Below the pieces are notes generated by a model that worked only from the letters and a program-made list of their open reading frames with translations, did no database searches and was not told the origin of the DNA. The position numbers and the translations under genes were made by a program. DNA of 53,356 bases, counting the filler, from Sluysia triapertura (taxonomy: Eukaryota): the NCBI GenBank assembly GCA_046118255.1. It is 3 parts of 3 records of this genome, joined end to end, with 100 filler letters (N's around TTAATTAATTAA, not from the genome) between each part and the next. Parts side by side here need not be neighbours in the genome. Positions count along the whole stretch, not along the records: positions 40,124 to 53,356 come from JBJNIA010051117.1; 2 more parts are not named here. The stretch is one strand, 5' to 3'. Position 1 is the first letter of the stretch. Each line of letters starts with the position of its first letter. Of the stretch, positions 1 to 53,356 are shown one piece after another.

Positions 1-659
1 CATCACTTTCTTTGTGCATGTCTATTACGAGACATCATCTGGAATCATACGTTTCTATTTAGAAAATGAAACATTTTATTCGGTTAATCCAATGAAGTAA
101 CGAAATAATTAATCCATTGGTGATAATGATAAGTTTAAATGATAATGATGATGATGGTGCAGATGATGACAATGATAGTTGATAAAATGATTAATTATAA
201 AATTATGATTAATATTTATTATTATTATTATCATTATTATTATTATAAATATATAATTATTAAAATTAAAATAAAGCTAAAGAATCTTAGTAACATTTTA
301 TCTCAGAAAATTGAGTCATGTTAAAGATGATTTCGTATTGCGCGTCTTTAATAAACTTGATAATGCTATATATAATGATAAAGATGTATAAAATGTGATT
401 TGTTCTGTATTGAAAATGATCATTTGCATAATCTGGTTTAATACGAACATCATAATTGGAATGTCTTGAAACCAAAATGCTTTTATGAGTAAGGCTGTGA
501 GTTGCATAAAGATGGTAGCGCCATAACCAATATGGTGCTGAACAAGTTGTCAGAATGTAATACAGGATTTCTAAGAAAAGTTAGTAAAACATAGAAAGGG
601 TAATTGCTGCAAATCAATATATAGTAAATTCAAACTACGACATAAGTTATGTTACTTAA

Positions 660-1400
660 TAGAAGTTACTTAAGTGGTTTTTCTAACACTTAACATACAG
701 CAAAATATTTCTTGACACGGTCCAGTATTTCTGCAACTTGATAAGTTAATAACTACTCTAATTCTAATCTTACAGCTTTAAAACTACTAACCACATTTAA
801 TACTCAAGGATCTTTGTACAATGATACTTTACAAATACTATTTTAACACGATGATGAATGGAACAAAAACTCAAACACTTTATTATTTAAAAATTTAATA
901 ATTTACAAAAATTGTAACAGATATAATGAGAAAACAGACAGAATAAAATTATTTATAAATATTAAAGTTAAAACCTTTTTAGTGTTTAATTAACTGTATT
1001 TTGCACCTCAATATATCGGAGAAACCTATTGTTTTCTTTTAAGATTTAAATTTAAGCGTATTTTTAGATACACTAAATAACTTACAGTTAACATGGATTT
1101 GATAATGCTTTTCCCCAAATCGATTGCGAATAAACTCCTTGTAAATCGAATAAAACAGCTAGCTAAAATTTCCAAATAATAGATTTTGAAATGGCGATTT
1201 TCACTAAACTGATACTAGTTTATATACTAGTCATTGACCAATGAGAATCGATGAAATAGAATATTCTAGAAATTTCATTTTCTTTTTTCGAAAATAATTA
1301 TTTTTAAAGTGATTTAAAAGATTTATAAATAATTTTAAAGCACTTTATATGATTCGAGAGTGTTTTGATGACAACCTAACAATAATAATAATAATGATAA
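660..1400 (-). repeat. Dispersed family A, copy A1 (promoter-like head plus decayed coding segments)
   Basis: The reverse complement of 1190-1400 aligns with 22965-23305. 994-1026 (rc ggtttctccgatatattgaggtgcaaaatacag) aligns with 23575-23605 and 29803-29835. 674-728 aligns with 14895-14952. Confidence 0.8.
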
Positions 1401-1442
1401 TACTATTGTAAATAAAATAAAATTAAAATAAATAGAAAATAA

Positions 1443-1581
1443 ATTCATTTCAAATTTAGCTTAATCTTCATTTCCAATATAAATTAATTCCTATATAATA
1501 TTCATTTCAAATTTAGCTTAATCTTCGTTTCCAATTTAAATTAATTCCTATATAATATTCATTTCAAATTTAGCTTAATCT
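1443..1581. repeat. Tandem repeat, 57-bp unit x ~2.4
   Basis: attcatttcaaatttagcttaatct restarts at 1443, 1500 and 1557. Confidence 0.95.
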
Positions 1582-1886
1582 GCATTAAATTAACTCTTAT
1601 ATAAAATTTAAATTAATCATTTTACATGTAAAATTTAATAACATAATAATAAACAAATAAGTGAATGAAATAGTAGTAATTAAAATTAACAAGGAAAAGT
1701 GATAACATATACACCATCAAATAATAACAGAATATAGTGTATATGAAATCAGACTATAGAATAAATGAAATAATATTTAAAAAGTAATTACACTATATAT
1801 TACTGTATTACAAAAAATTGAAAAATGTCATCATTATGGAAAGAATCAAGTATAAATAGACGGGTTTTATCAACACATTTCACAAG

Positions 1887-1933
1887 GTATCGATTTGGTT
1901 TCAAGTATTTAATTTGGTATCGATTTGGTTTCC
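1887..1933. repeat. Short direct repeat (ggtatcgatttggtttc x2, 30-bp period)
   Basis: Read directly from the sequence. Confidence 0.85.
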
Positions 1934-2649
1934 ATTACTGTTCGAGTTCAAGGTATTTATTGTATCCAGTTCGAGGTATTTGACATTTTACAATTTAAAA
2001 TACATTAGTATCTGATTTTAATTGTGAGTGAATTTTTAGAATAACATTTAAAATACTTCAAGTATTAAATTTGAATTTAATCTTAAAGAAGTTCTGTAAG
2101 CACCCTAAATACGTGTGGTACATTTTATATTGTGAATATTATTATCCGAACTATTTTTGTAGACTTAGTATTTGTTACTTACATTTGATAAATAAACCTT
2201 TAGCGAGTTTAGTTCGTATTATTTGATTTTAAGAAGAAAAGCTTGAATTTTCACATTTAGAATCTAGGCAACCACATTTTTGCACTTCCATCGTTCCATC
2301 TACGATGAGTGAACGAGCGATCCCAGATAAGTATAAATAAATATAAAAGCAAGAGCAAAGACAAAAAGTATCTGAAACATTTTAAGTTAAAAGTATTCAA
2401 AACAGTTAAGTTAATATTTTAAAGTTATTAGTGTTACATATTTTTTTAATAACAGTTTTATTATATAATTAATTTATCGATGTAATTTATTCTGGATTTT
2501 GTTCTTTCTAAAAAAAATTGGATTTTTCAATGTAAGTAATTTCTAATTGTTTATTTAATAATTTTAATATAAAGTTTATAAAATTTTGAAAGTTAATAAG
2601 TTAATTTTTATATAAAAATCTTTAAAAAATAAAGTTAATTGTTTTAATA

Positions 2650-3270
2650 TATTAATAAAATAATTTTGTTTTAGTCTGGCCAAGGTCATTTATCATTAAA
2701 ATTTATCATTAAAATTTCATGATATAGGAATTATAATAAATAATTCCGCGTAATATATTTCATTATTACCCAAATTTGTGTAATTTATTATATCATTATG
2801 TCTTTAATTCAGAAAGATTTCCCTTGTTAGATTTTAATTCTAACCTCGTAAACTATTTATTAAAGATCGTTTTTTACAGGATCCACGTAAACTATCAATG
2901 TAACATTATCTGGTTTATAAATAACAAAATTTGAATATTTAAATACCTCCAGAAAATTTCACTGAATAAAATAATTAAAATAAGAAGACCTTGTAGTAAG
3001 AATCTTTTAAGAAATCACTTCAGTTTTTAAAAAATATTTTATCTACAAATCAAACGGCTGGCTCTAACTGGTAAGCTCAGTACGCTGGTGTACTCACGTT
3101 AAAACTTTTGCTTTATTCTATCGTGTCTTTACTTTAAATTTCCACATTTATTTTGAGTATATTATTATTATTTTGAGTATTATTCATGTTCATAATGTAA
3201 ATATTGTAATTAAATTTGTGTATATATAATAAATCAAAGGATATTTATGCCACTTTTTAAATCAAAAGTT
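2650..3270 (+). repeat. Dispersed family B, copy B1 (decayed coding sequence)
   Basis: 3046-3100 (QIKRLALTGKLSTLVYS) matches rc 52205-52265 (QIQRLALAGKPSTLVNS). 2828-2895 matches rc 52390-52460. Confidence 0.75.
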
Positions 3271-40123: not shown

Positions 40124-40689
40124 ATATAGGAAATGTAAAATATACTCAAAATCATTTCATCTTTCGTGTAAGACCTTAATACGGCTTGCATAATATAATT
40201 TTAAATTCATATGAAAAAAATTGAGTTTTTTATTAACTTGATGATTCATATTATAAAGGAATTTTATCAGTTTATTATTTTTATAATTAAAATTAATTAA
40301 ATTAAGGGTATTATTTTATTATTATTTTAATTGAAATTAATAAAATTATTTGAAATTATTTAAAATTGTTAAGTAAAAATATTTATTAAAAAATTTGAGT
40401 GAAAAAAATTTATTGCTATTTAAGAATTATAAACAAATAATAATATTCTTTAAATCTATGATTAATATTTACACTGCTTAGTTACGGCAGAATATAGATA
40501 CAAATTTTATTTCGATATATCTCAATAGTTATTTTGTATAGCAAAAGAGAAGGAAATTTTAATCATTTACTTGGTTTAACGTTTTATTTAGGAAGAATAA
40601 ATAATTCCTGATCACGGTCGATGGCTAATTAATTGAAGAATTACTGAAACTAATTTAATATTTTGTAAATCATTAGTTTTTATCATAAT

Positions 40690-40775
40690 TTTATTATTTT
40701 TTGTAATAAAATTATAAAACAAGTTTAAAAATCCCCTTAAACTTGTTTTATAATTTTATTGCAAAAAATAATAAA
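40690..40775. repeat. Near-perfect inverted repeat (39-bp arms, 8-nt loop)
   Basis: 40690-40728 versus 40737-40775, with one T/G non-Watson-Crick position. Loop aaatcccc. Confidence 0.95.
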
Positions 40776-40999
40776 CAACTAAATTTATTTATTCACTAAG
40801 TTATTACACTTCATTAAGAGATATAGACACAAGTCAATCAACTTAAATAAAAATATTCTTGTAGATTTAAGATGCTTAAATTGGTTAACAATTTTAAGTT
40901 ATATAATAAAGAGTTTACAAAATATGTTTCTAATCTATGTTTCAAAATTTTTTACTTATAGTTCGAATTTTATGTAATTAAAGAAAAACTGTTGATTCA

Positions 41000-42364
41000 A
41001 AAATTTATAATAAAAAGAATAAGATATATGAAAAGAAATTTTATTATATATAAAATATCCAAAATTTACATTACTAAATGCAAGAATAGTGTTCTCTACA
41101 TTGTCATTTACCCATGTTTCCCTACCTAAACCAAAAGTAACGGTTAAATCATCATCAGAATAAAAATAGATAAAATTTACGTTATTGTTGTAACTAAAGT
41201 CGTTGCTATTCGCTGGAGTTTGAATACCAATAGCTTGTAGTAGATCTTTCACTTTGAGTAGGTGATCCGAATGAGAATGATCGGGACTTGTACTCATCAT
41301 TTGACCAATCGTATGGACATACAGACAATCGTTGTAAATCTTGTGCAGATACAATCGAGGTCGCTTCCGTATGGGCACAGCGCCAACCCGACAAATTGTC
41401 TTGAATTTGGTTTTATTATAGTATTTATATACTTTTTAATTTCTGAATTTTTTTCACATGAGACAAACATTTAATCGACATATGATATTTGTTAAAACGC
41501 GTGGGAGAATTACTTTTTGACTGTACGTTTACTTGAAAATCATTATGGTGTAAACTGTTAACATTATTCTCATCATTTGCTTTACTTTCTAATGTGTAAT
41601 ATTTGTTGTCTAAGGTATAATCATTTACATTGATCGTAGTAGTGACTGAAACGAGAACTAATATTCGTTTATTTTGAGATAAAATGTAATCATCATTACT
41701 ATTTACAATAGATTTCGAATTCATTGATTCATCATCATCATTAAAGTCTTCGAATGAACTATCATAAGTTTTATTCATGTCTACATTGAAATCAATTAAA
41801 TTATTTGGTATCATATCTAAGCCAGATAATTTTAGTGCATCCGAATTAACCTATTTATCTAACAAAGGTGATCTTGTATACAGTTTAAAATATAAATCTT
41901 CAATCAATTTTAATAATCCGCAACATGCTTCAAACAGTTCAAGATCTCTTAGAAATGAATTCTTAGAATAAAAATGATTCGAAAATTTCGTGTCAAATTT
42001 TAATGATTCAATATAACGATTTAATGTTGATTCATTGATAGCATGCCAAATCCAAATTCTACTGTAACCAATATCTGTAACAGGATCATTATCATCATGC
42101 AGGTATTCAAAAAAAACTTTCGAAATTATTTCTTTCATGACTGTCCAAAATTCATGATCAAAAACCAGCTTGGGCTATTAAGCTTTCTGAAAACAGAGGT
42201 TTATATCTAAGTTGTTGATAAAGAAATATTAATTCTATGCAAGAACAGAAATTAAATGAATAAATAAAATCCGAAATTTCTTGACGGTTTCTACCTTCTT
42301 TATACATTAATATAGCTTGTCTAGATCTTTTCAAATATTATATAATTAACTCTTTTTCAAGCAT
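41000..42364 (-). pseudogene. PLEKHM1: PLEKHM1-like (RUN domain, acidic linker, possible PH remnant) pseudogene
   Basis: ATG at 42364. FCSCIELIFLY / EFWTVMK / TDIGYSRIWIWHAINESTLNRYI / FYSKNSFLRD / YTRSPLLDK*VNSDALKLSGL follow the PLEKHM1 RUN domain. Lesions: TAA at codon 9, a +1 frameshift in a T run near 42160-42164, and TAG at 41851-41853. Confidence 0.75.
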
Positions 42365-42534
42365 TTAAATTAACTTTTTAAATTTTTTTAACATGAATTA
42401 AAATTTTATTTTGTACTGATGTTGATTAATTATTATTATACGTTTTTCCAAATATATAGTTAAAAAATTACATAATTTTTATTTCCTTTTGTCTAAAATC
42501 ACTAAATTTGTTTTATGCATAAATTAATTAAGTA

Positions 42535-42850
42535 GGATAGTTTTATCCAACCATAGTGGTTTATTCAGTTAGGTGTGATAATAATTCTGAATAACTGTGT
42601 GTGTACTTAATTTTATTAATCTGAGTACACATAGTAAGTCATGTTAAGTCATGATAAGTAGAGAAACTGTTGATTGGGCAGTCAACCTAAGTGCAACTTA
42701 ATAACCGAATTTGATTGACTGTCCAATCATAAAAGCAAAATTTATGTACATTATCAATTAATATGCTTGTCACCATTAAGCCCAAAATCTGTCAAGGTAA
42801 TGATTAAAAATGGTGACAAGCAATTGTGATTAGTAATGATAAGTAGTCAC
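42535..42850 (+). ncRNA. Candidate structured RNA or cis-element (six stem-loops)
   Basis: Stems: 42535-39/42544-48; 42561-68/42587-94; 42598-609/42622-33; 42671-85/42715-29; 42764-77/42809-22; 42826-32/42844-50. The non-Watson-Crick pairs in these stems are G-U on the plus strand. Confidence 0.45.
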
Positions 42851-42999
42851 TACGAAGTGCGGCTGTTTGATTAACTATGAGTTGTAAAATTGACAATAAT
42901 AATAATAATGAAAAAATAAAATGATGATAGTAATAATAATAACAAGAATGTTATTACTAAATGGATAAATCCTTTTGAAAGCTGAAAACATAATCTTCT

Positions 43000-43800
43000 A
43001 ATTCTTCTATTTTTTCTAAACATATTTGAAGTTTTAAATTTATTTGATGTTCTTAGTGTGGATTTAAAGAATTGCGAACTTATAAAGTTTTAGTGTACCT
43101 GCACAACTTATCTTATAGTTCTAAAGTTAAGAGTTTGAATGTTGGAAGCTTATGATTTAAATATTTTAGAATAATATGAGAGTTTTATGTGAATTTCCAA
43201 ATAAATATTCATGTTTTGAATGAAAGTGATGTTTGGATGTTAAAAGATTGTGAATTGTTGAAAAAGAGTAGTTTAGTGGATGTGAATAAGATAGATCATA
43301 AGCTGTGTTTTGGTACGTTGAAAAGATGGTTGTACAATGTTGAAAATGTGATTTATTTTCTTGATAATTTTAAGAAATAATGTCTTCCTGTGATGTTAGA
43401 GATTAAGTGATAAAGAATTATGAATCTGGAATGTTTGAATTGATTTATAAATGTCTAGTAGTTAATTTCGGTTGTGGTTGAAATTGGATTGTTAAGAAAT
43501 GAAGGATAAAGTGTTTTAGATGAATTTTTAATGTAAAATGATGGTTTTGAATATAATTGTGGTTTGAATGTTGTAAGAATATGGATTTAAAATTTTTGAT
43601 ATGAGGAAATTGATTTTAATGGATGAAAAGAATAAAATATAAAAACGGTTTTAATAAATTCTAAAAGATTGTTGTGTAGTGTTAAGGAATGTGATTTTGA
43701 TATTATTGACATGGAACTATGTATAAAATGTTTTTAAGGGATTTTAAAATGTATATTGTATATTTTGAAAGTTTATGTGGTTTTGTAATGTTCAAAAAAA
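43000..43800. repeat. Dispersed family E (G/T-skewed tract), longest copy
   Basis: Shares short blocks with 27860-28320, and more weakly with 17600-17800 and 34600-34920. Confidence 0.5.
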
Positions 43801-44741
43801 ATTTAATAAAATTTGTCAAAAGTAATAGGTTGGCCACAACATATTTAATAAAAGCATTTAAAATTTTAAAGGTTATGGAATGCCTAATATATTGATGTTT
43901 AAAGATCTTTGCTATGCTATATTTGATTTAGCAAAGGTATTACTCTGAACACTCCATTTTCGCTTTAAAAAATAAAATGTAACACTATGTTATTACCAAC
44001 TTTATTACAAGTAGAAAAATGTAACAGCAAATTTATTCACCAGGGTTATTCGCAATAATTAGTTAAACATCTTATTTCCATTACTCGGTACTTAATTTAT
44101 CTTCCAGAAACCTAAAAATATTATCAAAATTCCCCAAATTTTCATTCAAAGCAAACATTAATCAATTACGGTAAATCTCAATGTCTAGCTCAACATTTAG
44201 TAAACACTTTTCATCTCAAATCAAAATAAAAAGTCATAAATATCCAAGTCATCTTTAATACAGTATCTTATAACAATAAACATTATTGCGTAAATTTATC
44301 GTTTTCAATCAACCTCAACAGATTCAATCTTCCTAAGAATTAAGAAAACCGTAATTAGTTCAGCTAAATATCCATCTAAGGTAAGTTAATTTATGCAAGA
44401 TCGGGTAATGAGCTCATAATTAAAGAAACTATGTAATTTTTTTCTCTTTAATTTTTTGTGATTTGTTTTCAAAGATAACTCTCGAGTTCACAGGTTCACA
44501 TCAATATTCTGTAAGTAGCTCCTGTTCGTAAATACAAAATTGATAGAAACAAATAGATATATTGGTTTTGAAGATCTTTAAGTTCAGAATTATAGCGAAG
44601 TTTAAATCTACTTTTCACAATCATAAACATTTCATCACAAATCAACACTTAATACATTCAAAACATAATTTATAATTACCATAAATTTACAATTATTTTT
44701 ATCACAGTAATAATTACTCATAATAATTTTAGTATTACCGC

Positions 44742-44742
<1 letters not shown>

Positions 44743-44789
<47 letters not shown>
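44743..44789. repeat. (AAT)n microsatellite
   Basis: Read directly from the sequence. Confidence 0.95.
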
Positions 44790-45179
44790 CGCCATAATAA
44801 TACTAAACCGTTATAATAATTCTGTTATCGTTCTAATTTTCTAATTATTGTTACAATTTCTTTTAATGTTTTCTTTTGCATGTATGTACGCATGTTTATA
44901 TTTTTTTGTATGTATGTTAATATGTTTTGTCAATAACACGTTTATTAGATTTTTCACTAACCAATAAAGATGTGGCAATGAACCAGTTCTAATAGATGAT
45001 ATTGTGATGATGATTAACAAAATTGTGGAATTATTTTCAATTTTTTTATTTATCAATCTTTTCAACATGATACAATAAATCCAAATGAACGAATTTGTTG
45101 CCTTATTCGAAAAGGCAACAATAAATAAATAAGAACAATCAATTACAACGACCAATCAAATTGATTTATACTGTGCAAT

Positions 45180-45830
45180 TTTGAAATTACTCACTGGTAT
45201 TACGTACAACTTAATATGAATTAATAATGACAATAAACAATTAACTAAAATAATATCACCGAAAATTACTGAACTACTGACATGTTTATATCGATAATTC
45301 GTCAACCTTATACGACCCATACAAACCACTGTTTAGTTCCCGGTGTCCGTATCTATTCCAGTAATGCCGTTTCCGCCTTACGTAAATGATTCGTTTGTGA
45401 TAGTTATTTTTACTTTTTTTACCACTGCTAATATAATTGGTTGCATAACACTGTACTGTTTTATAGTTAAGTCAGCTGTATTAGAAAAACAGAAAGACAC
45501 TAAATGGTATATTCGTATATTTGGTGTAATTTGGTTAGATAATTGGTTGTCATGGTTTTTGTTTTGCATGACTATTCTATTTGATGTATTTTGATAGAAT
45601 TTTGGTATATTATAAGTATTATAAGTATGTATCTTATTCTTTTTCATTCACATGTGAGGCTTTCTTAGTATTTACATTTTTCAATAGTTTTAAAATAGCA
45701 GGTATTGTTTCTGGTACCTTGTTATCCCTCAAAAAGAAGATTCATTAACAGAATGATATTATTGTGTATTATATTTATCATCACAAGTCAGTCTCTTTGT
45801 AGCATTTTCATGTATTCAGTTGGGAACAAA
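45180..45830 (+). pseudogene. ABCA-subfamily transporter pseudogene, copy 1 (first transmembrane domain)
   Basis: MPFPPYVNDSF...IVKSAVLEKQKDTKWYIRIFGVIWLDNWLSWF and YSFSFTCEAFLVFTFFNSFKIAGIVSG match ABCA motifs (PYPPY..D.F; IV.EKE..LKE.M..MGL....W.SWF; FL.STFFS....A). In-frame stops occur upstream and within. Confidence 0.82.
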
Positions 45831-45977
45831 CGACACCTTGTGTACAATATAAGTTATTCACAAACTTCATAATTCCTGAAATTATAAAAATTATAATAAA
45901 TATTAAAAAATTAATAATTAAAAAGTGTTAGGCAAAAAATTAAAAAATCGATTTATTCTAGTAAACTATTTTATGAT

Positions 45978-47830
45978 GTGAAAACTAATACTTATAATCC
46001 AATTTTATTACGCTTTCGGTTGCCAGAAAAATATTTCGATCATTTAATACATTACAAAAACAATGATAGAAGCAAAGGTAGTTTTCTAAAATCAGATCAT
46101 GAGGTATTATTACAAGAATATGTATATTCTTATTTTATCCGATTATCCGTTGCATATGTAATATTAATGATTTTAGTTCTTGAACGTGAGGGAATTATAA
46201 GAATTTATTGCTATATATCCAGCGAAGTTAAAATTGGTAATGAAGAAGTTGTGCGAAAAATGCACCCAAGTCCGTATTTGTGTATTTAATTTTACGTATA
46301 ACTTTATCATGCGTGTTCTTCATTTATTTGTTTTATAATAAAAAAATTTTGTTGAATTTGGTTAATTTCTTGATATCAAAAATTTTAATTGTTATTAAAG
46401 GTCATAAGCATAACTTGTTTATGAAATCTGTTAATTTAAATATTAGAGTTTCAGATAAAATTTCTTTAAATTCATTGTTATTAAATTTTACATAGTGTTA
46501 AACAATTATAAGTCCTCATTAGAAGAACATTTATACTGTTGTGTGTATACTAATAATATTTTACTTTTCAATACCAATAAAAGATTTCAGAATGTCAGAA
46601 ATAGCTTGCTGATTTAATGGTAAAGAATAATAAAAAAATTAACAATATGTGTATGTATTTGTTATGGTTTGATGTGTTTCTGTACGGATGCGTCTTTTAT
46701 AATATATACGTCATTTTTTATTGTATGTATGTCGTTTTTATGAAATACACAACTGAATAATGCTGAGAAAAAGTATCGAGCTAAAAGTAAATTTTTGTTA
46801 TGTCAAGAATTGAATGCGCCCGCACACATACGGTGATTGTTTAGTTGTTTGTATGCCAATTTTTTTCCTGAATTGAATGAGAATTATTTTGCATAACGGC
46901 AGAACCAGTATAAATAAATTGTTTTGTTGAAATTACAAAAAAATAGTTAAAACAATTTATGGTGGTAAAAGAAAAAAATATAAAGATATATTTTTATGTA
47001 ATAAACAAAACAAAAAAATAAAACAATACACCTAATCCGCAAATGGATAAGTTTATTCGCAAAATCAATATGAACGCACTAATTCGGAAACAAATAACGT
47101 GAGTTGATAATAACCATCAGCAGTTTTCGAAAGTATTTGGAGTTCTATTAATGAAACTTGAACGATAAAACTAAAAATACTAGGTACCGTTACACTTATA
47201 CGTGACTTTGTATTGAGAATGGTATTGAGACTGAAGCTTTAGTCCATGCTAATGGAACGATGAAAGCTATAGATAATATAAAGACAGTGATCAAAGAAGC
47301 ATGTGTTTCCACTATTGATGTTCTTGCGGTTGCGTCTGATTTGAAATTAATATTTCGCGAATTATCTGATGAATCAGTACCTAAAACTTACACGAATAAA
47401 TTATGCGAAACTTATTATCTTATTTAACTTATCTAACATCGATGAATGCAGAAGACGTTAAAACTGTTTCGGGGAAGTCATTTTCAGGAATCTATAGATG
47501 AATTTTCACCGGATATTATTAATTTCTTAGATATTTTAGATCACATAATTATTTTTGTGAAAGGTAGTGGATCGATACATTATGCTAAAATTCCAAGTCA
47601 CACGTGGAATTTTGTTTCCAAAAATTGCAAATCTATTACAGCCACTTGTTTAAATACCATAGAACAAATAAAGACAGTAAAAAGAAATTTCGCTAAAGTT
47701 AGAGAATTAATAAAGATGGAATTAATCGAAAAACATCTTTGTAATTATATATCTCATAATGTATCAGGTGACAGCAGTCATGTGTCAGTTTGTGCCGTGG
47801 AAGTTCATTTGTGTTCAGAAACCACATAAT
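45978..47830 (+). pseudogene. ABCA-subfamily transporter pseudogene, copy 2 (ECD end, TMD1, degenerate NBD1)
   Basis: Collinear remnants: VLLQEYVYSYFIRL, VRKMHPSPY, LLWFDVFLYG (~46660-46690), PIFFP, GIETEALVHANGTMKAIDNI (NBD start), TWNFVSKNCKSIT and LCNYISHNV. Walker A and the signature motif are not recognisable. Confidence 0.6.
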
Positions 47831-48619
47831 CCAGTGGTCAAAAATCAATTCCATCCTCAAAGCGTGATGTGAGCTCATTAGCAGCAATGATCATTAAAGT
47901 ATTTCAGAACCTCTACTAATAAATTATCCCTAGAAACAGTTATCGTCTATGAAAATAACCATTTATGTATATCCACATCAGAATGTCCTAGTATAGCACA
48001 TTTTGATCAAGAACTAGCAAATGTTTTTAACATGGAATCAGTAAGTTTTCACGTCATTATGTCGTAATGAACATTTGTTCTATTTTTATATCTTTTATTG
48101 TTTAATTAAAAATTGTTAATGTACTTTATTATGTCATTTAATTTTCAGCGTAAAACATTAAAGGCAAGTTTGCGCAGTTCTTTAAATCATTAAAATTAAT
48201 CTTGGAATGAATTTTATCTATAAATATTTCAGGAAGCGTAAATTTTATTTCAATTCAATAAAAACAAAGTATCTAAAGCCAGATAAAACTAAGGAAATTA
48301 AAAACACGATCTTACCTACATCAAGTACGAATGTCACAAACGTACCACGTACTAAAACCTATCACACATTCCATATATTTCTTCAGCACTGATACCATAT
48401 TTTGACTTATAACCTGTTGAATAACAATATTTTTAAATATACTGTCTTTTTATTCATGAACTGAAAGGTCTATAAGATGCTCAGAACTAATAGGATCACG
48501 AATTTGGTGTTTTTTTCAATAATCACTCTTCACAATGTTCGGGTGGAAACTCCGTCCTGGCCCTTTTTGAGAATTATGTATTCATCCTTAAAGCAAAAAA
48601 ATCAACAATTTATACCTAT

Positions 48620-49340
48620 AATAATAAATTGGATGCAAACACCTTAAATATTACTGAAATTAAGCATGTTAAACTTAATAATAATCCCAAATCACCGAAG
48701 TCTTCATTTATTCCTCTCTAAATTGTTTTATTTACTGCTTTAACATTATTCAAAATAACTTTCGATATTGTATTTGTTTCCACCTAATTTGTTATACATT
48801 TTATCACCTTTAACAACAGTATCATACGAATCGCATGATCGAGAATATATTCCATTTGACAATAACAATTCTTAGAACATTTTAGGATTAAATTTAGAAC
48901 ATTACGATTAGTAGTTGCTGATTTTGTAATAGTTTCTCCAAAAATTATATAACTCTTATAGTTGGTGTTTCAAATATATATATTTGAAAACATATATTTG
49001 CAGTAGTCAGTTAAATCTTTTATCGTATCCTTACAGAAGGTAAATTTTACTTTATCATCAGAATTCGTCATCATGCCGATATGTGGAACATTATCAACAT
49101 AACTCAGTAACTCTTGATTTTCAAAATGTCGTCCATAGTCACGATTTTCATGAATATATACTTATTTAAATGTATCTTTATTTAAATGTATACTTATTAT
49201 AAATAAAAAGACATTTTTAACTTGATCTGTAGGTTATTTCATTATGCATATATTGTACCATATTTCAATCATGTTAATAAATTGGACATCTATTTGGCAC
49301 CATTGATGTAATAATGTAATAAAAAGGAGAAATATATAAT
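48620..49340 (-). pseudogene. Decayed coding region, possibly a secreted protein
   Basis: One frame (IHENRDYGRHFENQELLSYVDNVPHIG...KCSKNCYCQMEY...EDFGDLG) runs about 175 codons with only a few stops. A hydrophobic leader-like segment lies near 49300-49345. Confidence 0.35.
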
Positions 49341-50356
49341 AAAACTAGTAATAATGAAATAAAATAATAATAGAAAAATGCAATAAGTAAACTTGTAAAT
49401 AATTAATAAATTATGCGTATTTTATTGTTTTGAGTATTTTATGAATTATTATAATTTTATAATTATTATAATTTTGATGATTGCGGTGAAAGGATAACTT
49501 TTACAACTAAGAACAGTGAAAGTTAAGTTTTATTTAAAAGTTTTATTAAAAAGTTTTATTAAATAAAAATTAAGTTTTATTTAATGACTTTAGAAAAATC
49601 AATGGTGTTGACATTCTACAGAGTCGATATATATAAAACTTATATGTGTTACATGTGTTATAAAACGTTAAAAGTGTTCTCTTTTGATACTATCTTTTCA
49701 ATTTGATATTCTGGATAAAAACCACTATATATATGATAATAGTTTTGAATGATCCTTTCACATCCTAATATATTCATTGTTAAGATGAATGAAAAAATAC
49801 TTTCATATTTAAATTACTATTAGAAAAATTTATTTAATATTGAAAATATAATGTAAAAAATAAAATTATTGGAAAAATTAAAATTCCAAACTCTATTCAA
49901 ACAAAACACCATTTGTGTAAAACGTTGACATTTTTTACAAAAAGTTTTTGTCAAATTTTTTCTCTTGTTAAGAGATGTTTATAATAACAATCTTTTATTA
50001 AAGAAAGTCGTGTACGGTGGTTTCGAAATGAGGCATAATGTATTTTTCATTTTGTAACTGTCTTGCATCTCATCTAGTGGGATTAAAACAGTGATTCTAG
50101 AATTAATCGAAACTACCACTGGTTGAAGATATAAGCAGCAATTAATTATTTTGAGTCACCATGAAAAAGGACAAGGTACTTTTCTGTATGAAAATGCTAA
50201 ACTACATATAAGTAAATCAGTCATTGGATATATAAGTATTATTCGATTTATGTTTTTTGAGGATACTAAACATTACTTTAATGATTGGATTGATTCAGAA
50301 AGACCAAATTTCTTTCGTTTAATCTATTTATTATCTGAAAACTAGAAAGATTTATA

Positions 50357-50358
<2 letters not shown>

Positions 50359-50401
<43 letters not shown>
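50359..50401. repeat. (ATA)n microsatellite
   Basis: Read directly from the sequence. Confidence 0.95.
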
Positions 50402-50403
<2 letters not shown>

Positions 50404-50603
50404 TATTTATTTTATAATTAAATATTATTTATAGCAGTCAGAGTAGTGGAAATCTGTTTAAGTAATCTATCCAAAGTATTTTATATTTTGTAAATACTCA
50501 ACCTTTACATTTGAATTTATATAACATTTTTATCATGAATAATCATAATGAAACAGTAAATGCAACTTTCTTTCGTTACAAATATTTATATATTATATTT
50601 TAG

Positions 50604-50807
50604 ATTAATGAATACAATTTCCTATATGAATCTTCGAATAATCTTCCAAAAATGTTGGTATCAGTCAAATCACCAATATCCAGACGGAATACAATCACAG
50701 AAGGATTGAATCGTGGGTCAAGTTTTTTAAATCCAACCACTTCAATTATTTTGCAAAATAAATCAATTCGTATTCGTCCTAATTTTCCTTTTCCATGGGT
50801 TTCTCAA

Positions 50808-50863
<56 letters not shown>

Positions 50864-51012
50864 CAATACTAATAATAATACCAATACTAATAATAATACC
50901 AATAATAATAATACCAATACTAATAATAATACCAATAATAATAATACCAATACTAATAACAATACCAATACTAATAATAACAATAATAATAATCAAAAAA
51001 TGAACCAAAAAG
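50604..51012 (+). CDS. Putative internal exon containing a ~61-codon poly-Asn/Thr tract
   Basis: ttttag acceptor ending at 50603, an open frame INEYNFLYESS...NNN(T/N)n...QKMNQK, and an AG|GTAAGT donor at 51013. Confidence 0.45.
50808..50993. repeat. Compound (AAT)n/(AAT ACC AAT ACT) microsatellite
   Basis: Read directly from the sequence; all units are multiples of 3. Confidence 0.95.
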
Positions 51013-52089
51013 GTAAGTAAAATAATTTTAAAATTCATTCTATTTATTAATGTTATTTTTATTTTAATTAAGTTATTCTCAAAGTTATTTCTTCAGATTT
51101 TAACAAAATTTATTTAACGGAGTTTAGTAAACATGGAATTTTTGAAATACTAAGTTTTCAATAAAATTAATGTGATATTTAGAAAAGAAATAATCAAAAG
51201 TTTTATTTATAAAATATCTAAATGAGCATCGCGTTTGTCTGTGCATTTCTGACATCTTTCTGAAGCAGAGCGACAAACTTTTTAACATAACAAAATCAGA
51301 TGCCACCACAACTCTTTTAGTTTAGCAATACTTGAAGATTTTGTTGAGTTAATAAAGTCTGCTCGTTAAGTCTAATGTCCTTCGAAGTTACCCATTCAAT
51401 CTAAGCATTAGGAATTTTTTTGATAAATTAAAACAAAAAATTAAATTCAAAAAACTGAATTGTTCAACGTGAACCTTATTGCTTATAAATGCAAAATTTA
51501 ACACTAAACGTACCGAAGTTTGATGTATACACCTACATATAAAATTAAAAGTCATATTATAAAATCGTATAAAAAACTATACAATTTCGTAGTATTTTTT
51601 ACAGTAAAAACGAAAACGTGTCATTTGACCAGTCGGGTTACATTTAGTGTTAAATAAAACTTTATTGAAAACTATATGAATTATATATTAGCATTAATTT
51701 ACTTTTCAAGCGTTTTTAAATTGTAATTTTGTTTTAATATTTTCTTTTATGAATATGTGAAAGAAATTTCAAAAAGGAAGAGACAAGATTTATTTGCAGA
51801 AGATAAACATAAGTTAATAGAATTATATCAACGTTTTTTTCATTGGGCTCTGCAAATAATTTTTTGAAATTCCGAAATTACATTTTCATTTCATATTTAA
51901 CAATAAGGAAAATCTTGATTCTTTGGCGTTTGGGTGAGTTTAGAATTAGAAATATAAGAGCAATAAATGTAGGTATCATTGGCAATATATTATAAATGCC
52001 GGCTTTAAAATTAACAGAATATTTCGGAAATTATGATTTTAATGAATGGTCTAATTCTTTTCTTTTGAGCCATGATATCATATAAAAGA

Positions 52090-52690
52090 ATCATCGAAAA
52101 CCGTGGATAAAAGGTTTGCTCTTAATTTTAAAGAATTGTATGTGACAAATTTGAAGGAATATAAAGATAGTGTGAGAAAATTAACGTTAGAATAAAATTT
52201 AATTTAAAGCTGTGAGTTCACCAACGTACTGGGCTTACCAGCGAGGGCCAACCGTTGGATTTGGTAAGATAAAAGTAATGAAGGTTAAGAGAGCTTTAAC
52301 TATAGGCTAATTGACTTAACTATTAATTTAGACTAAATAATTTAATTAATAATTTAATAATTATCAGTTATTCAAAAGTTTAAATAAGATTTTACGCTTG
52401 ATCATGTGAAATAGGATCGGAATAGTTATATTACGAGGTTAGAGTTACATTCTAACCAGAAAACTCTCAAACTAGTATATATGATTTTAATTTATTTTGT
52501 AACTATAAAAATTAGATAATCAAAGAAAAAACTTCAAATTTACAATGTGTATTATTAAAATATACAGAAAATTTTAGTTATAACGTAAATTATGAAGAAA
52601 AAATATACAAAAATTTATAAAAATAATTATATGTATATAGGTACGTTGCGACCAGAATTAAAAATTAATTATTTTAATTTATTGGATTTT
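52090..52690 (-). repeat. Dispersed family B, copy B2
   Basis: The reverse complement aligns collinearly with 2650-3270. Confidence 0.75.
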
Positions 52691-52857
52691 AAATTTAAAT
52701 TTACGTCTGAATCTATTATAAGATTCGAAATGTAATATTAAATGAGTTTAAGTCGGAGTTTACGAAGGATATTTAATAAATATTCGATCTTAACAAAAAT
52801 AAACTAACTATACAAAGAAATAAAATTCGAATTGCGTATTCCATCGAAGAGATTCTG

Positions 52858-52975
52858 TAAGCCAAAGAACTGTGCAATAAAGTTCGGAATTGATTATGTC
52901 TTTGATGAGCCAAAAATTGTGCAGTAAGATCTGGAATTGATTATGTCTTCGGTAAACCAAAAAGAAAATTGTGTC
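52858..52975 (+). repeat. ~48-bp tandem repeat x ~2.3 (KPKNCA..GIDYVF 16-aa unit)
   Basis: ggaattgattatgtctt occurs twice about 47 bp apart, each time preceded by tgtgca.taa. Confidence 0.8.
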
Positions 52976-53030
52976 AAAAAATTCAGTAAAACTATTGTGT
53001 TCATGGTTAAAATTTTATGCATATTTATAG

Positions 53031-53064
53031 TTGTTTTAGTCTGACCAAGGTCAGACTTAAACAA
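53031..53064. repeat. Palindrome ttgttttagtctgacc-aa-ggtcagacttaaacaa
   Basis: 16-bp arms with one mismatch and a 2-nt spacer. The left half matches 2666-2688. Confidence 0.85.
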
Positions 53065-53356
53065 AACAAATATTTAATTTAAAAAATATAATTTTAATTT
53101 TAATTAATAATTTTAAAATTTCGTGTTAATTTTGAATTAATTTTTAGAAGATTTTAAATTCTAATGTTCATTAATTAAAAGAATTAATTATCTTAAAAGA
53201 ATATTTCCAAAATAATCGATAGATGTTCCAAAAATTATCAGAATAAATGTAAAAATCAAAAATTATTAAAATTAATAAGGTGTACAAAAATCAATATAAA
53301 ATTTAATAATGTATACAAATCGATAATTTAGTTACAAAATTAGCTATTAACACAAT

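What the first reader, a model, noticed from the sequence alone, without database searches (positions are those of the whole stretch)
42535..42875. Dense array of six stem-loops with G-U wobbles: candidate undescribed structured RNA
Seen: six near-adjacent stems of 5, 8(+5), 12, 15, 14 and 7 bp within ~320 nt. The two longest are GC-containing (tgattgggcagtcaa/ttgactgtccaatca and tgcttgtcaccatt/aatggtgacaagca) and each closes a ~30-nt loop. The arms differ in sequence from stem to stem, so this is not a tandem repeat. Every non-Watson-Crick pair in the stems is G-U on the plus strand, which suggests RNA-level selection and strand polarity. The 11-mer ATGATAAGTAG occurs twice (42651, 42836), each time followed by CTGTT(T)GATT. 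Inference: an ncRNA, or the structured terminus of a mobile element, since it abuts the family E tract. I cannot match it to a spliceosomal snRNA, U3, SRP or RNase P/MRP RNA.
Basis: partly seen in the sequence, partly recalled or inferred. Interest (0 to 1): 0.7.

Follow-up and report, generated by a model that had tools for sequence, protein, structure and literature searches.

The report
Hairpin cluster inside a dispersed repeat
The cluster of stem-loops is real and far from chance, but it folds equally well on both strands and as DNA and occurs in tens of diverged copies in the same genome, so it is most likely a piece of repetitive (transposon-type) DNA and not a new structured RNA gene.

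Summary
Three are strong: H3 42598-42633, H4 42671-42729 and H5 42764-42822. The 341-nt stretch folds far better than shuffles: z -5.8 on the + strand, -4.9 on the - strand, -5.2 with DNA parameters. The signal is therefore DNA-level inverted-repeat symmetry. The claimed G-U polarity rests on 3 wobbles against 1.

Rfam and tRNA scans find nothing. Runs of four or more T lie inside the stretch on both strands, so a single pol III transcript is unlikely.

The only public run holding this genome shows the block is multi-copy:
- About 17 contig variants cover 42836.
- Summed depth is about 530-1070, against about 15-20 for single-copy DNA.
- One paralog of about 84% identity spans 42574-42859.
- Another copy lacks H3.

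The block lies between a multi-copy RUN-domain pseudogene and a very high-copy C-poor repeat. Its copy number is 10-100 times lower than that repeat's, so it is not that repeat's terminus.

Best reading: a module of a dispersed, transposon-derived repeat. It may be the 3' end of a retroposon, since an (AAT)n tail follows it. Neither that sub-model nor any RNA role could be tested, because no paralog sequences or RNA data were reachable. Interest is low.

The parts
42535..42548 (.). H1: 5-bp stem GGATA/TATCC with a 4-nt loop. Weak; expected by chance.
42561..42594 (.). H2: perfect 8-bp stem TTATTCAG/CTGAATAA with an 18-nt loop. On its own it is not significant (z -1.8).
42598..42633 (.). H3: 12-bp stem with 2 G.T wobbles on the + strand and a 12-nt loop. 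At least one paralogous copy lacks it: a contig skips 42601-42644 and has 6 other letters there.
   Evidence: z -4.0 on +, -2.8 on -
42635..42659 (.). Tandem 10-mer TAAGTCATGW, 2.5 copies. Its last unit runs into the left copy of the 20-nt direct repeat.
42671..42729 (.). H4: 59-nt palindromic module. The arms are 15 bp with 1 G.T on the + strand, and extend to 20 nt at 85%. The loop is 29 nt and the termini are TG...CA.
   Evidence: z -5.2 on +, -5.0 on -
42749..42838 (.). H5: a perfect 14-bp stem (42764-77 / 42809-22) with a 31-nt loop; the core is 59 nt with TG...CA termini. An imperfect outer stem of 5 + 6 bp extends it to about 90 nt.
   Evidence: z -6.1 on +, -4.75 on -
42642..42661 (+).
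42827..42846 (+). Right copy of the 20-nt direct repeat. It lies inside the repeat family, not at an insertion edge: 17 contig variants run across 42836, and nearly all read T there.
42574..42859 (.). Extent of similarity to one diverged paralog: a 392-nt contig with 31 mismatches and 14 gap letters, about 84% identity. This is the minimum extent of the repeat unit.
   Evidence: table 8
42885..42960 (+). Imperfect (AAT)n / A-rich tract 25 nt downstream of the last stem. It is a possible retroposon tail.
41428..42174 (-). Left neighbour: a RUN-domain gene copy with an in-frame TAG at 41851-53 inside the homologous stretch. It is itself multi-copy and is probably a pseudogene.
43024..43943 (.). 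Its summed depth reaches about 12000, which is 10-100 times that of the hairpin block.

Best explanation
The hairpin cluster is a module of a moderately repeated, non-coding dispersed repeat in an AT-rich (about 25% G+C) eukaryotic, probably metazoan, genome. The repeat is transposon-derived. The stems are DNA inverted repeats carried by the repeat unit and copied along with it. They look clean because this copy lies close to the family consensus, not because a single-copy RNA gene is under selection.

The class of repeat is unresolved. My preferred sub-model, at about 0.3 of the total, is a 5'-truncated retroposon (non-LTR or SINE-like) 3' end on the + strand. In that model the 3' stem-loops, followed by an (AAT)n tail, would be the part of the RNA that the element's reverse transcriptase recognises.

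The next sub-model, also about 0.3, is small foldback or palindromic modules, made either by a DNA transposon or by template switching inside an unclassified repeat.

Shown: the stems, their significance, the symmetry between strands, the multi-copy state, a diverged paralog, and a copy without H3. Inferred: the transposon origin and both sub-models.
For: The block is multi-copy:
- Contigs matching with no differences from 43808 to 46500 show that run X1 holds this same genome. Their depth is 11-19.
- Summed depth is about 94 at 42472-42655 and about 1068 at 42656-42839.
- Depth is 534 in 17 contig variants at 42836, where all but the window's own copy read T.
- Depth is 564 at 42784.
- A 392-nt contig aligns to 42574-42859 with 31 mismatches and 14 gap letters, and is unlike the window on both sides.
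- One contig skips 42601-42644, which removes H3.

The context is a mosaic of repeats:
- A multi-copy RUN pseudogene lies on the left (31-53 contigs per site).
- A repeat of about 12000 depth lies on the right.

The fold signal is symmetric and present at DNA level: z -5.83 on +, -4.92 on -, -5.23 with DNA parameters.

No known RNA family matches and there is no tRNA.

For the retroposon sub-model, four weak signs agree on the + strand:
- An (AAT)n tract lies 25 nt 3' of the stems.
- Depth is higher towards the 3' side (94 rising to 1068).
- There are more G.U pairs and a slightly better z on the + strand.
- An 8-nt direct repeat, TCCTTTTG, sits at 42484 and at 42970, just after the tail.
Against: - No paralog sequence could be read, so the family's ends, class and consensus are unknown.
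- No terminal inverted repeat with a target-site duplication was found.
- The candidate 8-nt duplication is at chance level: 14% of shuffles and 21% of other genomic windows give one.
- Depth is not monotonic. The bin mean of 1068 exceeds the 530-560 seen at 42784 and 42836, and summed contig depth is a crude measure.
- The one long paralog stops aligning at 42859, 25 nt before the (AAT)n tract.
- (AAT)n tracts are common here.
- Being multi-copy does not exclude transcription or small-RNA production.
Confidence: 0.62

Rival explanations
1. The block is a small-RNA hairpin locus: a young, repeat-derived cluster of miRNA-like or hairpin-siRNA precursors. H4 and H5 would be transcribed and diced. 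Known examples include MITE-derived miRNAs such as Made1/mir-548 and hairpins born by template switching.
For: - H4 is 59 nt with arms of about 20-22 nt and dG -22.7.
- Extended H5 is about 90 nt with 25 bp plus apical pairs and dG -30.2, which is in the size and energy range of precursors.
- Near-perfect stems are typical of young repeat-derived hairpins (PMC1784062; 10.1101/2023.04.19.537475).
- The host is probably a metazoan.
Against: - The stems are shorter than the roughly 35 bp preferred for animal pri-miRNAs (10.1101/2023.04.19.537475).
- The apical loops are large (16-31 nt unpaired), and H4 has no basal stem.
- No miRNA family matches.
- No RNA run holds the stretch, so there is no evidence of expression.
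Confidence: 0.12
2. The hairpins arose locally by template switching, that is inverted duplication during replication. They have no function and are unrelated to transposition. The repeat merely carries them, or some are private to this copy.
For: - H5 is a perfect 14-bp inverted copy and H4 and H3 are near-perfect. The mismatches are transitions only.
- One paralog lacks H3 altogether and has 6 other letters in its place. This is what a hairpin created or removed in one step would look like.
- Template switching is documented to create whole perfect stems (PMC8794818, PMC5453318).
Against: - H4 and H5 lie in the part with the highest copy number, so they were probably already in the family's ancestor and not made here.
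- Three or more independent events within 250 nt would be needed.
- No outgroup or ancestral sequence was available to test the diagnostic pattern.
Confidence: 0.13
3. The block is a novel structured non-coding RNA gene. It would be transcribed from the + strand, with the stems maintained by RNA-level selection.
For: - z is -5.8 on the + strand, slightly better than on the - strand.
- There are 14 G-U pairs in the + strand MFE fold against 6 on the - strand.
- All three non-Watson-Crick pairs in the core stems are G.U on the + strand.
Against: - The + strand is G- and T-richer, so its shuffles also fold better: -67.9 against -56.5.
- The - strand and DNA folds are nearly as significant.
- The wobble tally of 3 against 1 is not significant.
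- T runs of four or more lie inside the stretch on both strands.
- The block is multi-copy with about 84% paralogs and a copy lacking H3.
- There is no Rfam match.
Confidence: 0.05
4. The cluster is a chance run of inverted repeats in AT-rich DNA.
For: AT-rich low-complexity DNA in this piece makes even stronger hairpins elsewhere (40664-40783, z -12).
Against: - The stems here contain G+C.
- No shuffle out of 100-200 folds as well.
- Perfect G+C-containing inverted repeats of 12 bp or more are expected 0.1 times in the whole piece.
Confidence: 0.02

Closest known systems
3' stem-loop plus short-tandem-repeat tail of 'stringent' non-LTR retrotransposons and their partner SINEs (for example eel UnaL2; the (TAA)n tail of the Drosophila I factor).
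   Same: - Stem-loops lie just upstream of a simple-repeat (AAT)n tract.
- The block is multi-copy, with apparently more copies towards the 3' side.
- All the weak polarity signs point to the + strand.
   Different: - No reverse-transcriptase ORF, common 3' end or significant target-site duplication was shown.
- There are three or more stems spread over about 250 nt, not one terminal stem-loop.
- The paralog alignment stops 25 nt before the tail.
MITE or foldback elements that fold into hairpins, for example human Made1, the source of mir-548 (PMC1784062)
   Same: - Short palindromic modules (H4 and the H5 core are 59 nt each; extended H5 is about 90 nt) with near-perfect arms.
- Multi-copy.
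- Both modules have TG...CA ends.
   Different: - No target-site duplication flanks any module.
- The loops are about 30 nt, against 6 nt in Made1.
- The arms are 14-15 bp, against 37 bp.
- It is not shown that the single modules are mobile on their own.
Hairpins created by template-switch mutations (PMC8794818; PMC5453318; 10.1101/2023.04.19.537475)
   Same: - Perfect or near-perfect inverted copies tens of bases long.
- One copy of the repeat lacks a whole hairpin.
   Different: No ancestral state is available. The hairpins sit in the multi-copy part, so they are probably inherited by the copies and not made in place.
Polycistronic animal miRNA clusters
   Same: Several hairpins of 40-90 nt lie in a row within about 300 nt.
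   Different: - The stems are too short and the loops too large.
- The arms are unrelated to any Rfam miRNA family.
- There are no expression data.

Membership tests
Any described RNA family (Rfam 15) | A covariance-model match at or near the family's gathering score | tested here: not met
   Nothing was found in 42535-42875 at E up to 1 over the 13-kb piece. On the 511-nt stretch alone, the best hits are 10-18 bits against gathering scores of 35-140, with E 3-7.
Animal miRNA precursor | An imperfect stem of about 33-35 bp including an 11-bp basal segment, with an apical loop of about 10-20 nt | tested here: not met
   H4 has 15 + 5 bp and no basal stem. H5 has 6 + 5 + 14 bp and a 31-nt apical region. 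H3 has 12 bp.
Animal miRNA precursor | Reads of about 22 nt from both arms with precise ends | not testable with these tools
   No RNA run holds the stretch.
MITE / foldback DNA transposon | Terminal inverted repeats flanked by a target-site duplication | tested here: not met
   A scan of 42350-43100 for arms of 11 nt or more with flanking direct repeats of 2-10 nt found only AT-rich or sub-stem artefacts. H4 and H5 have no flanking duplication.
MITE / foldback DNA transposon | Many dispersed copies | tested here: met
   17 contig variants cover 42836, summed depth is 530-1070 against 15-20 for single copy, and there is a paralog at about 84% identity.
Non-LTR retroposon 3' end / SINE | A simple-repeat or A-rich 3' tail | tested here: met
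   An imperfect (AAT)n tract at 42885-42960 lies 25 nt after the last stem. Such tracts are common in this piece, however.
Non-LTR retroposon 3' end / SINE | A target-site duplication around the element plus its tail | tested here: inconclusive
   TCCTTTTG occurs at 42484 and 42970. Such a match arises in 14% of shuffles and 21% of other genomic windows.
Non-LTR retroposon 3' end / SINE | Copies share the 3' end and are truncated at variable 5' points | tested here: inconclusive
   Depth rises from 94 (42472-42655) to 1068 (42656-42839), but is 530-560 at 42784 and 42836. Summed contig depth is too crude to decide.
Non-LTR retroposon 3' end / SINE | A tRNA-type pol III head, or longer copies with a reverse-transcriptase ORF | tested here: not met
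   No tRNA-like sequence was found, and no RT domain was found in the ORFs tested. Longer copies elsewhere could not be fetched.
Template-switch-born hairpin | An ancestral or outgroup sequence lacking the inverted copy, with the source sequence adjacent | tested here: inconclusive
   One paralog lacks 42601-42644 (H3) and has ATACTG there. Its full sequence could not be read.

The most novel reading that the evidence does not exclude
The array is a functional RNA module of a lineage-specific repeat in an unsampled, very AT-rich metazoan. It would be either the multi-stem 3' recognition structure of an undescribed retroposon family, or a repeat-derived hairpin cluster that feeds the small-RNA pathway. 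In either case the + strand G-U bias would reflect real RNA-level constraint.
Probability: 0.12. Interest if true: 0.4.

Novelty: new member of a known kind. Interest (0 to 1): 0.2.

Why it matters
The result mainly serves as a caution. A very good fold z-score and tidy G-U wobbles are not enough to call a structured RNA when the signal is symmetric between strands and the sequence is a dispersed repeat.

If the retroposon reading holds, the block would mark the 3' recognition module of an uncharacterised element. The host lineage has no close relative in the protein databases searched: its RUN domain is at most 36% identical to anything in 1.8 billion representatives. That would be of modest use for annotating repeats in this genome.

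If small RNAs come from H4 and H5, it would be one more case of hairpin genes born from repeats.

Tried and rejected
Attempts to reach paralogs or relatives outside the window:
- A word-based protein search with the RUN exon and with an ORF of the high-copy repeat found no candidates.
- An exact look-up of ten ORFs found none in the collection.
- A metagenome scan for an 18-mer of H4 gave 7 hits. All were chance, with G+C of 42-67% and no similarity beyond the word.
- Both-arm patterns of H4 and H5, and a 23-mer of family E, gave 0 hits in viral and prokaryote-genome collections.
- The full HMMER search with the RUN exon found only distant RUN proteins, at most 36% identity and best E 6e-10. 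The nearest are named PLEKHM1 and Rubicon-like, from arthropods.

Ideas tested and dropped:
- A second copy of the cluster within the 13-kb piece: none found by blastn. The second RUN-like ORF at 47446-47826 is not a close paralog.
- A ciliate genetic code as the explanation for the in-frame TAG in the RUN gene. There is only one TAR codon in about 215 homologous codons and CAA/CAG are used for Gln, so this is a nonsense mutation or a small intron.
- Family E as a clean tandem satellite: the two putative units align poorly.
- Bacterial-type promoters and terminators: no excess.

Full report
**Setting**

The usable piece (40124-53356) is about 25% G+C and looks eukaryotic.
- On the minus strand at 41428-42174 lies a RUN-domain gene copy (Pfam RUN, E 8e-10).
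- Its nearest relatives among 1.84 billion representative proteins are only 31-36% identical. They are named PLEKHM1 (Diaphorina) and Rubicon-like (Artemia).
- The ESM Atlas neighbours are metazoan RUN proteins.
- Homology runs across an in-frame TAG at 41851-53, and the stretch is multi-copy. This copy is therefore probably a pseudogene of an expanded family.
- The host is most likely a very AT-rich metazoan with no close relative in the protein collections. I could not name it.

**Checking the observation**

- H1, 5 bp.
- H2, 8 bp.
- H3, 12 bp with two G.U (42598-609 / 42622-33).
- H4, 15 bp with one G.U (42671-85 / 42715-29, loop 29).
- H5, 14 bp perfect (42764-77 / 42809-22, loop 31). Imperfect outer pairs extend it to 42749-42838.
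- The sixth stem is 4 bp on the + strand and 7 bp only on the - strand.

The cluster is not chance:
- The 341 nt fold at -95 kcal/mol, against -67.9 +/- 4.6 for dinucleotide shuffles, giving z -5.83.
- H3, H4 and extended H5 alone give z -4.0, -5.2 and -6.1.
- H5 is the only perfect G+C-containing inverted repeat of 12 bp or more with a loop up to 60 nt in 13 kb. Shuffles give 0.1.
- Of the four inverted repeats in the piece with 12 or more matches and 4 or more G/C, two are H4 and H5.
- In a sliding 120-nt scan, the three windows over H4 and H5 rank among the most negative on both strands. AT-only palindromes elsewhere are stronger: 40664-40783 at z -12 and 53024-53143 at z -7.

**Strand polarity**

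This does not hold up.
- The minus strand gives z -4.92.
- Its H4 and H5 give -5.0 and -4.75.
- DNA parameters give z -5.23.
- The + strand is richer in G and T, so its shuffles also fold better.
- In the core palindromes there are three transition mismatches that read G.T on the + strand, two in H3 and one in H4. One, directly inside the H4 stem, reads C.A on + and G.U on -. Three against one is not significant.
- The signal is therefore the symmetry of DNA inverted repeats.
- Runs of four or more T lie inside the stretch on both strands, which argues against one pol III transcript.
- Rfam finds nothing at permissive thresholds, and there is no tRNA.
- The 11-mer ATGATAAGTAG does occur twice, but 7% of shuffles do as well. 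It belongs to a 17/20 direct repeat at 42642-61 / 42827-46.

**The block is repeated in the genome**

Only one public run holds the stretch. Its contigs match 43808-46500 with no differences at depth 11-19, so it is the same organism (table 8). When that run is laid on 41000-46500 at 80% likeness or more, the locus turns out to be a mosaic of repeats of very different copy number.

| Stretch | Summed depth | What it is |
|---|---|---|
| 41000-42471 | about 550-3000 | RUN copy |
| 42472-42655 | 94 | left part of the hairpin block |
| 42656-42839 | 1068 | H4 and H5 |
| 42840-43023 | 153 | partly masked (AAT)n |
| 43208-43575 | about 12000 | C-poor 'family E' |
| 43944 onward | about 30 | about 30 at 43944-44127; raised again at 44128-44863 (124-2253); single-copy from about 44864 |

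Further details within the block:
- 17 contig variants cross 42836 at a summed depth of 534. All but the window's own depth read T where the window has A.
- Depth is 564 at 42784.
- One 392-nt contig aligns to 42574-42859 with 31 mismatches and 14 gap letters (about 84% identity) and is unlike the window on both sides. This sets a minimum repeat unit that covers H3-H5.
- Another contig skips 42601-42644 and carries six other letters there, so that copy has no H3.

The cluster is therefore a dispersed repeat with tens of diverged copies, not a single-copy gene. Its copy number is 10-100 times below that of family E, and a low-copy stretch separates them. It is not the terminus of that element.

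**What kind of repeat**

This could not be settled, because no paralog sequence could be fetched.

A scan for terminal inverted repeats with target-site duplications around the block, or around single hairpins, found nothing convincing. One detail is worth noting: H4 and the H5 core are both exactly 59 nt long with TG...CA ends.

Four weak signs agree on a + strand retroposon 3' end:
- An imperfect (AAT)n tract at 42885-42960 lies 25 nt after the last stem.
- Depth is higher towards the 3' side.
- There are slightly more G.U pairs and a slightly better z on the + strand.
- An 8-nt direct repeat, TCCTTTTG, sits at 42484 and immediately after the tract at 42970.

Each sign is weak on its own:
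- The 8-mer match arises in 14-21% of controls.
- (AAT)n tracts are frequent here.
- The depth profile is not monotonic.
- The long paralog stops aligning at 42859.

If this sub-model is right, the stems would work at RNA level as the 3' structure that the element's reverse transcriptase recognises. I give it about 0.3.

The alternative sub-model is DNA-level palindromic modules. These could be foldback or MITE-like units, or hairpins made by template switching (PMC8794818; PMC5453318). The copy lacking H3 fits a hairpin gained or lost in one step. I give the foldback or palindromic-module sub-model about 0.3 as part of the repeat explanation; purely local template switching unrelated to transposition is scored apart, as a rival, at 0.13.

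**Rival readings with an RNA product**

H4 (59 nt, -22.7 kcal/mol) and extended H5 (about 90 nt, -30.2 kcal/mol) are in the size range of small-RNA precursors. Repeat-derived or template-switch-derived hairpins are known to become miRNAs (PMC1784062; 10.1101/2023.04.19.537475). Against this, the stems are shorter and the loops larger than the preferred pri-miRNA design described in the latter paper, no family matches, and there are no RNA data. I give it about 0.12. A free-standing novel structured RNA gets about 0.05, and chance about 0.02.

**Limits**

- No copy of the family other than the window's could be read base by base, so neither covariation nor element ends could be tested.
- No RNA run exists for the stretch.
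- Summed contig depth is a rough proxy for copy number.

**Verdict**

The 'undescribed structured RNA' interpretation is not supported. The 'mobile element' alternative is supported in general form, but not as the terminus of family E. This is an ordinary feature of repeat-rich DNA and of low interest. A small residual chance remains of an RNA-level role within a retroposon or a small-RNA pathway.

Noticed in passing
window 43125-43810: A strongly C-depleted stretch on the + strand: 20 C in 686 nt, with a 176-nt run without any C at 43470-43645. It coincides with a very high-copy repeat (summed depth about 12000, against 15-20 for single copy). The one-strand C loss in a high-copy repeat is unexplained. 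It could be a deamination-type hypermutation footprint or an intrinsically G/T-rich repeat.
   Followed up: partly
window 41428-42174 (-): A RUN-domain gene copy, nearest to PLEKHM1/Rubicon-type RUN domains at 31-36% identity. It has an in-frame TAG at 41851-53 inside the homologous region. The stretch is present in 31-53 contig variants in the run, so this is an expanded RUN-domain (pseudo)gene family.
   Followed up: partly
window 40690-40775: A 39-bp, 97% complementary, AT-only palindrome with an 8-nt spacer. It is the strongest hairpin in the piece (z about -12 on both strands).
   Followed up: no
window 53031-53064: A 15-bp inverted repeat with one mismatch and a 4-nt loop (TTGTTTTAGTCTGAC / GTCAGACTTAAACAA). 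The window over it gives z -7.3 on the + strand.
   Followed up: no
window 44496-44789: A multi-copy stretch (depth about 2250) ends in a perfect (AAT)16 at 44742-44789. This is a second case in the piece of a repeat followed by an AAT tract, and may be another retroposon-type tail.
   Followed up: no
window 47206-48718 (+): A series of + strand ORFs with weak, sub-threshold Pfam hits: RhoGAP 1e-3, RUN 9e-4, PH-like 1e-2. They may be exons of a single-copy multi-domain gene.
   Followed up: no
window 50127-50342 (+): By eye, a 72-aa ORF (…FLYENAKLHISKSV…) resembles the C-terminal part of a mariner-type transposase. Pfam gave no hit, so this is unverified.
   Followed up: partly
window 50808-50993 and 52858-52963: A 33-nt-period AAT/ACC-type array that reads as a poly-Asn/Thr ORF, and a 47-nt tandem repeat of 2.2 copies.
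   Followed up: no
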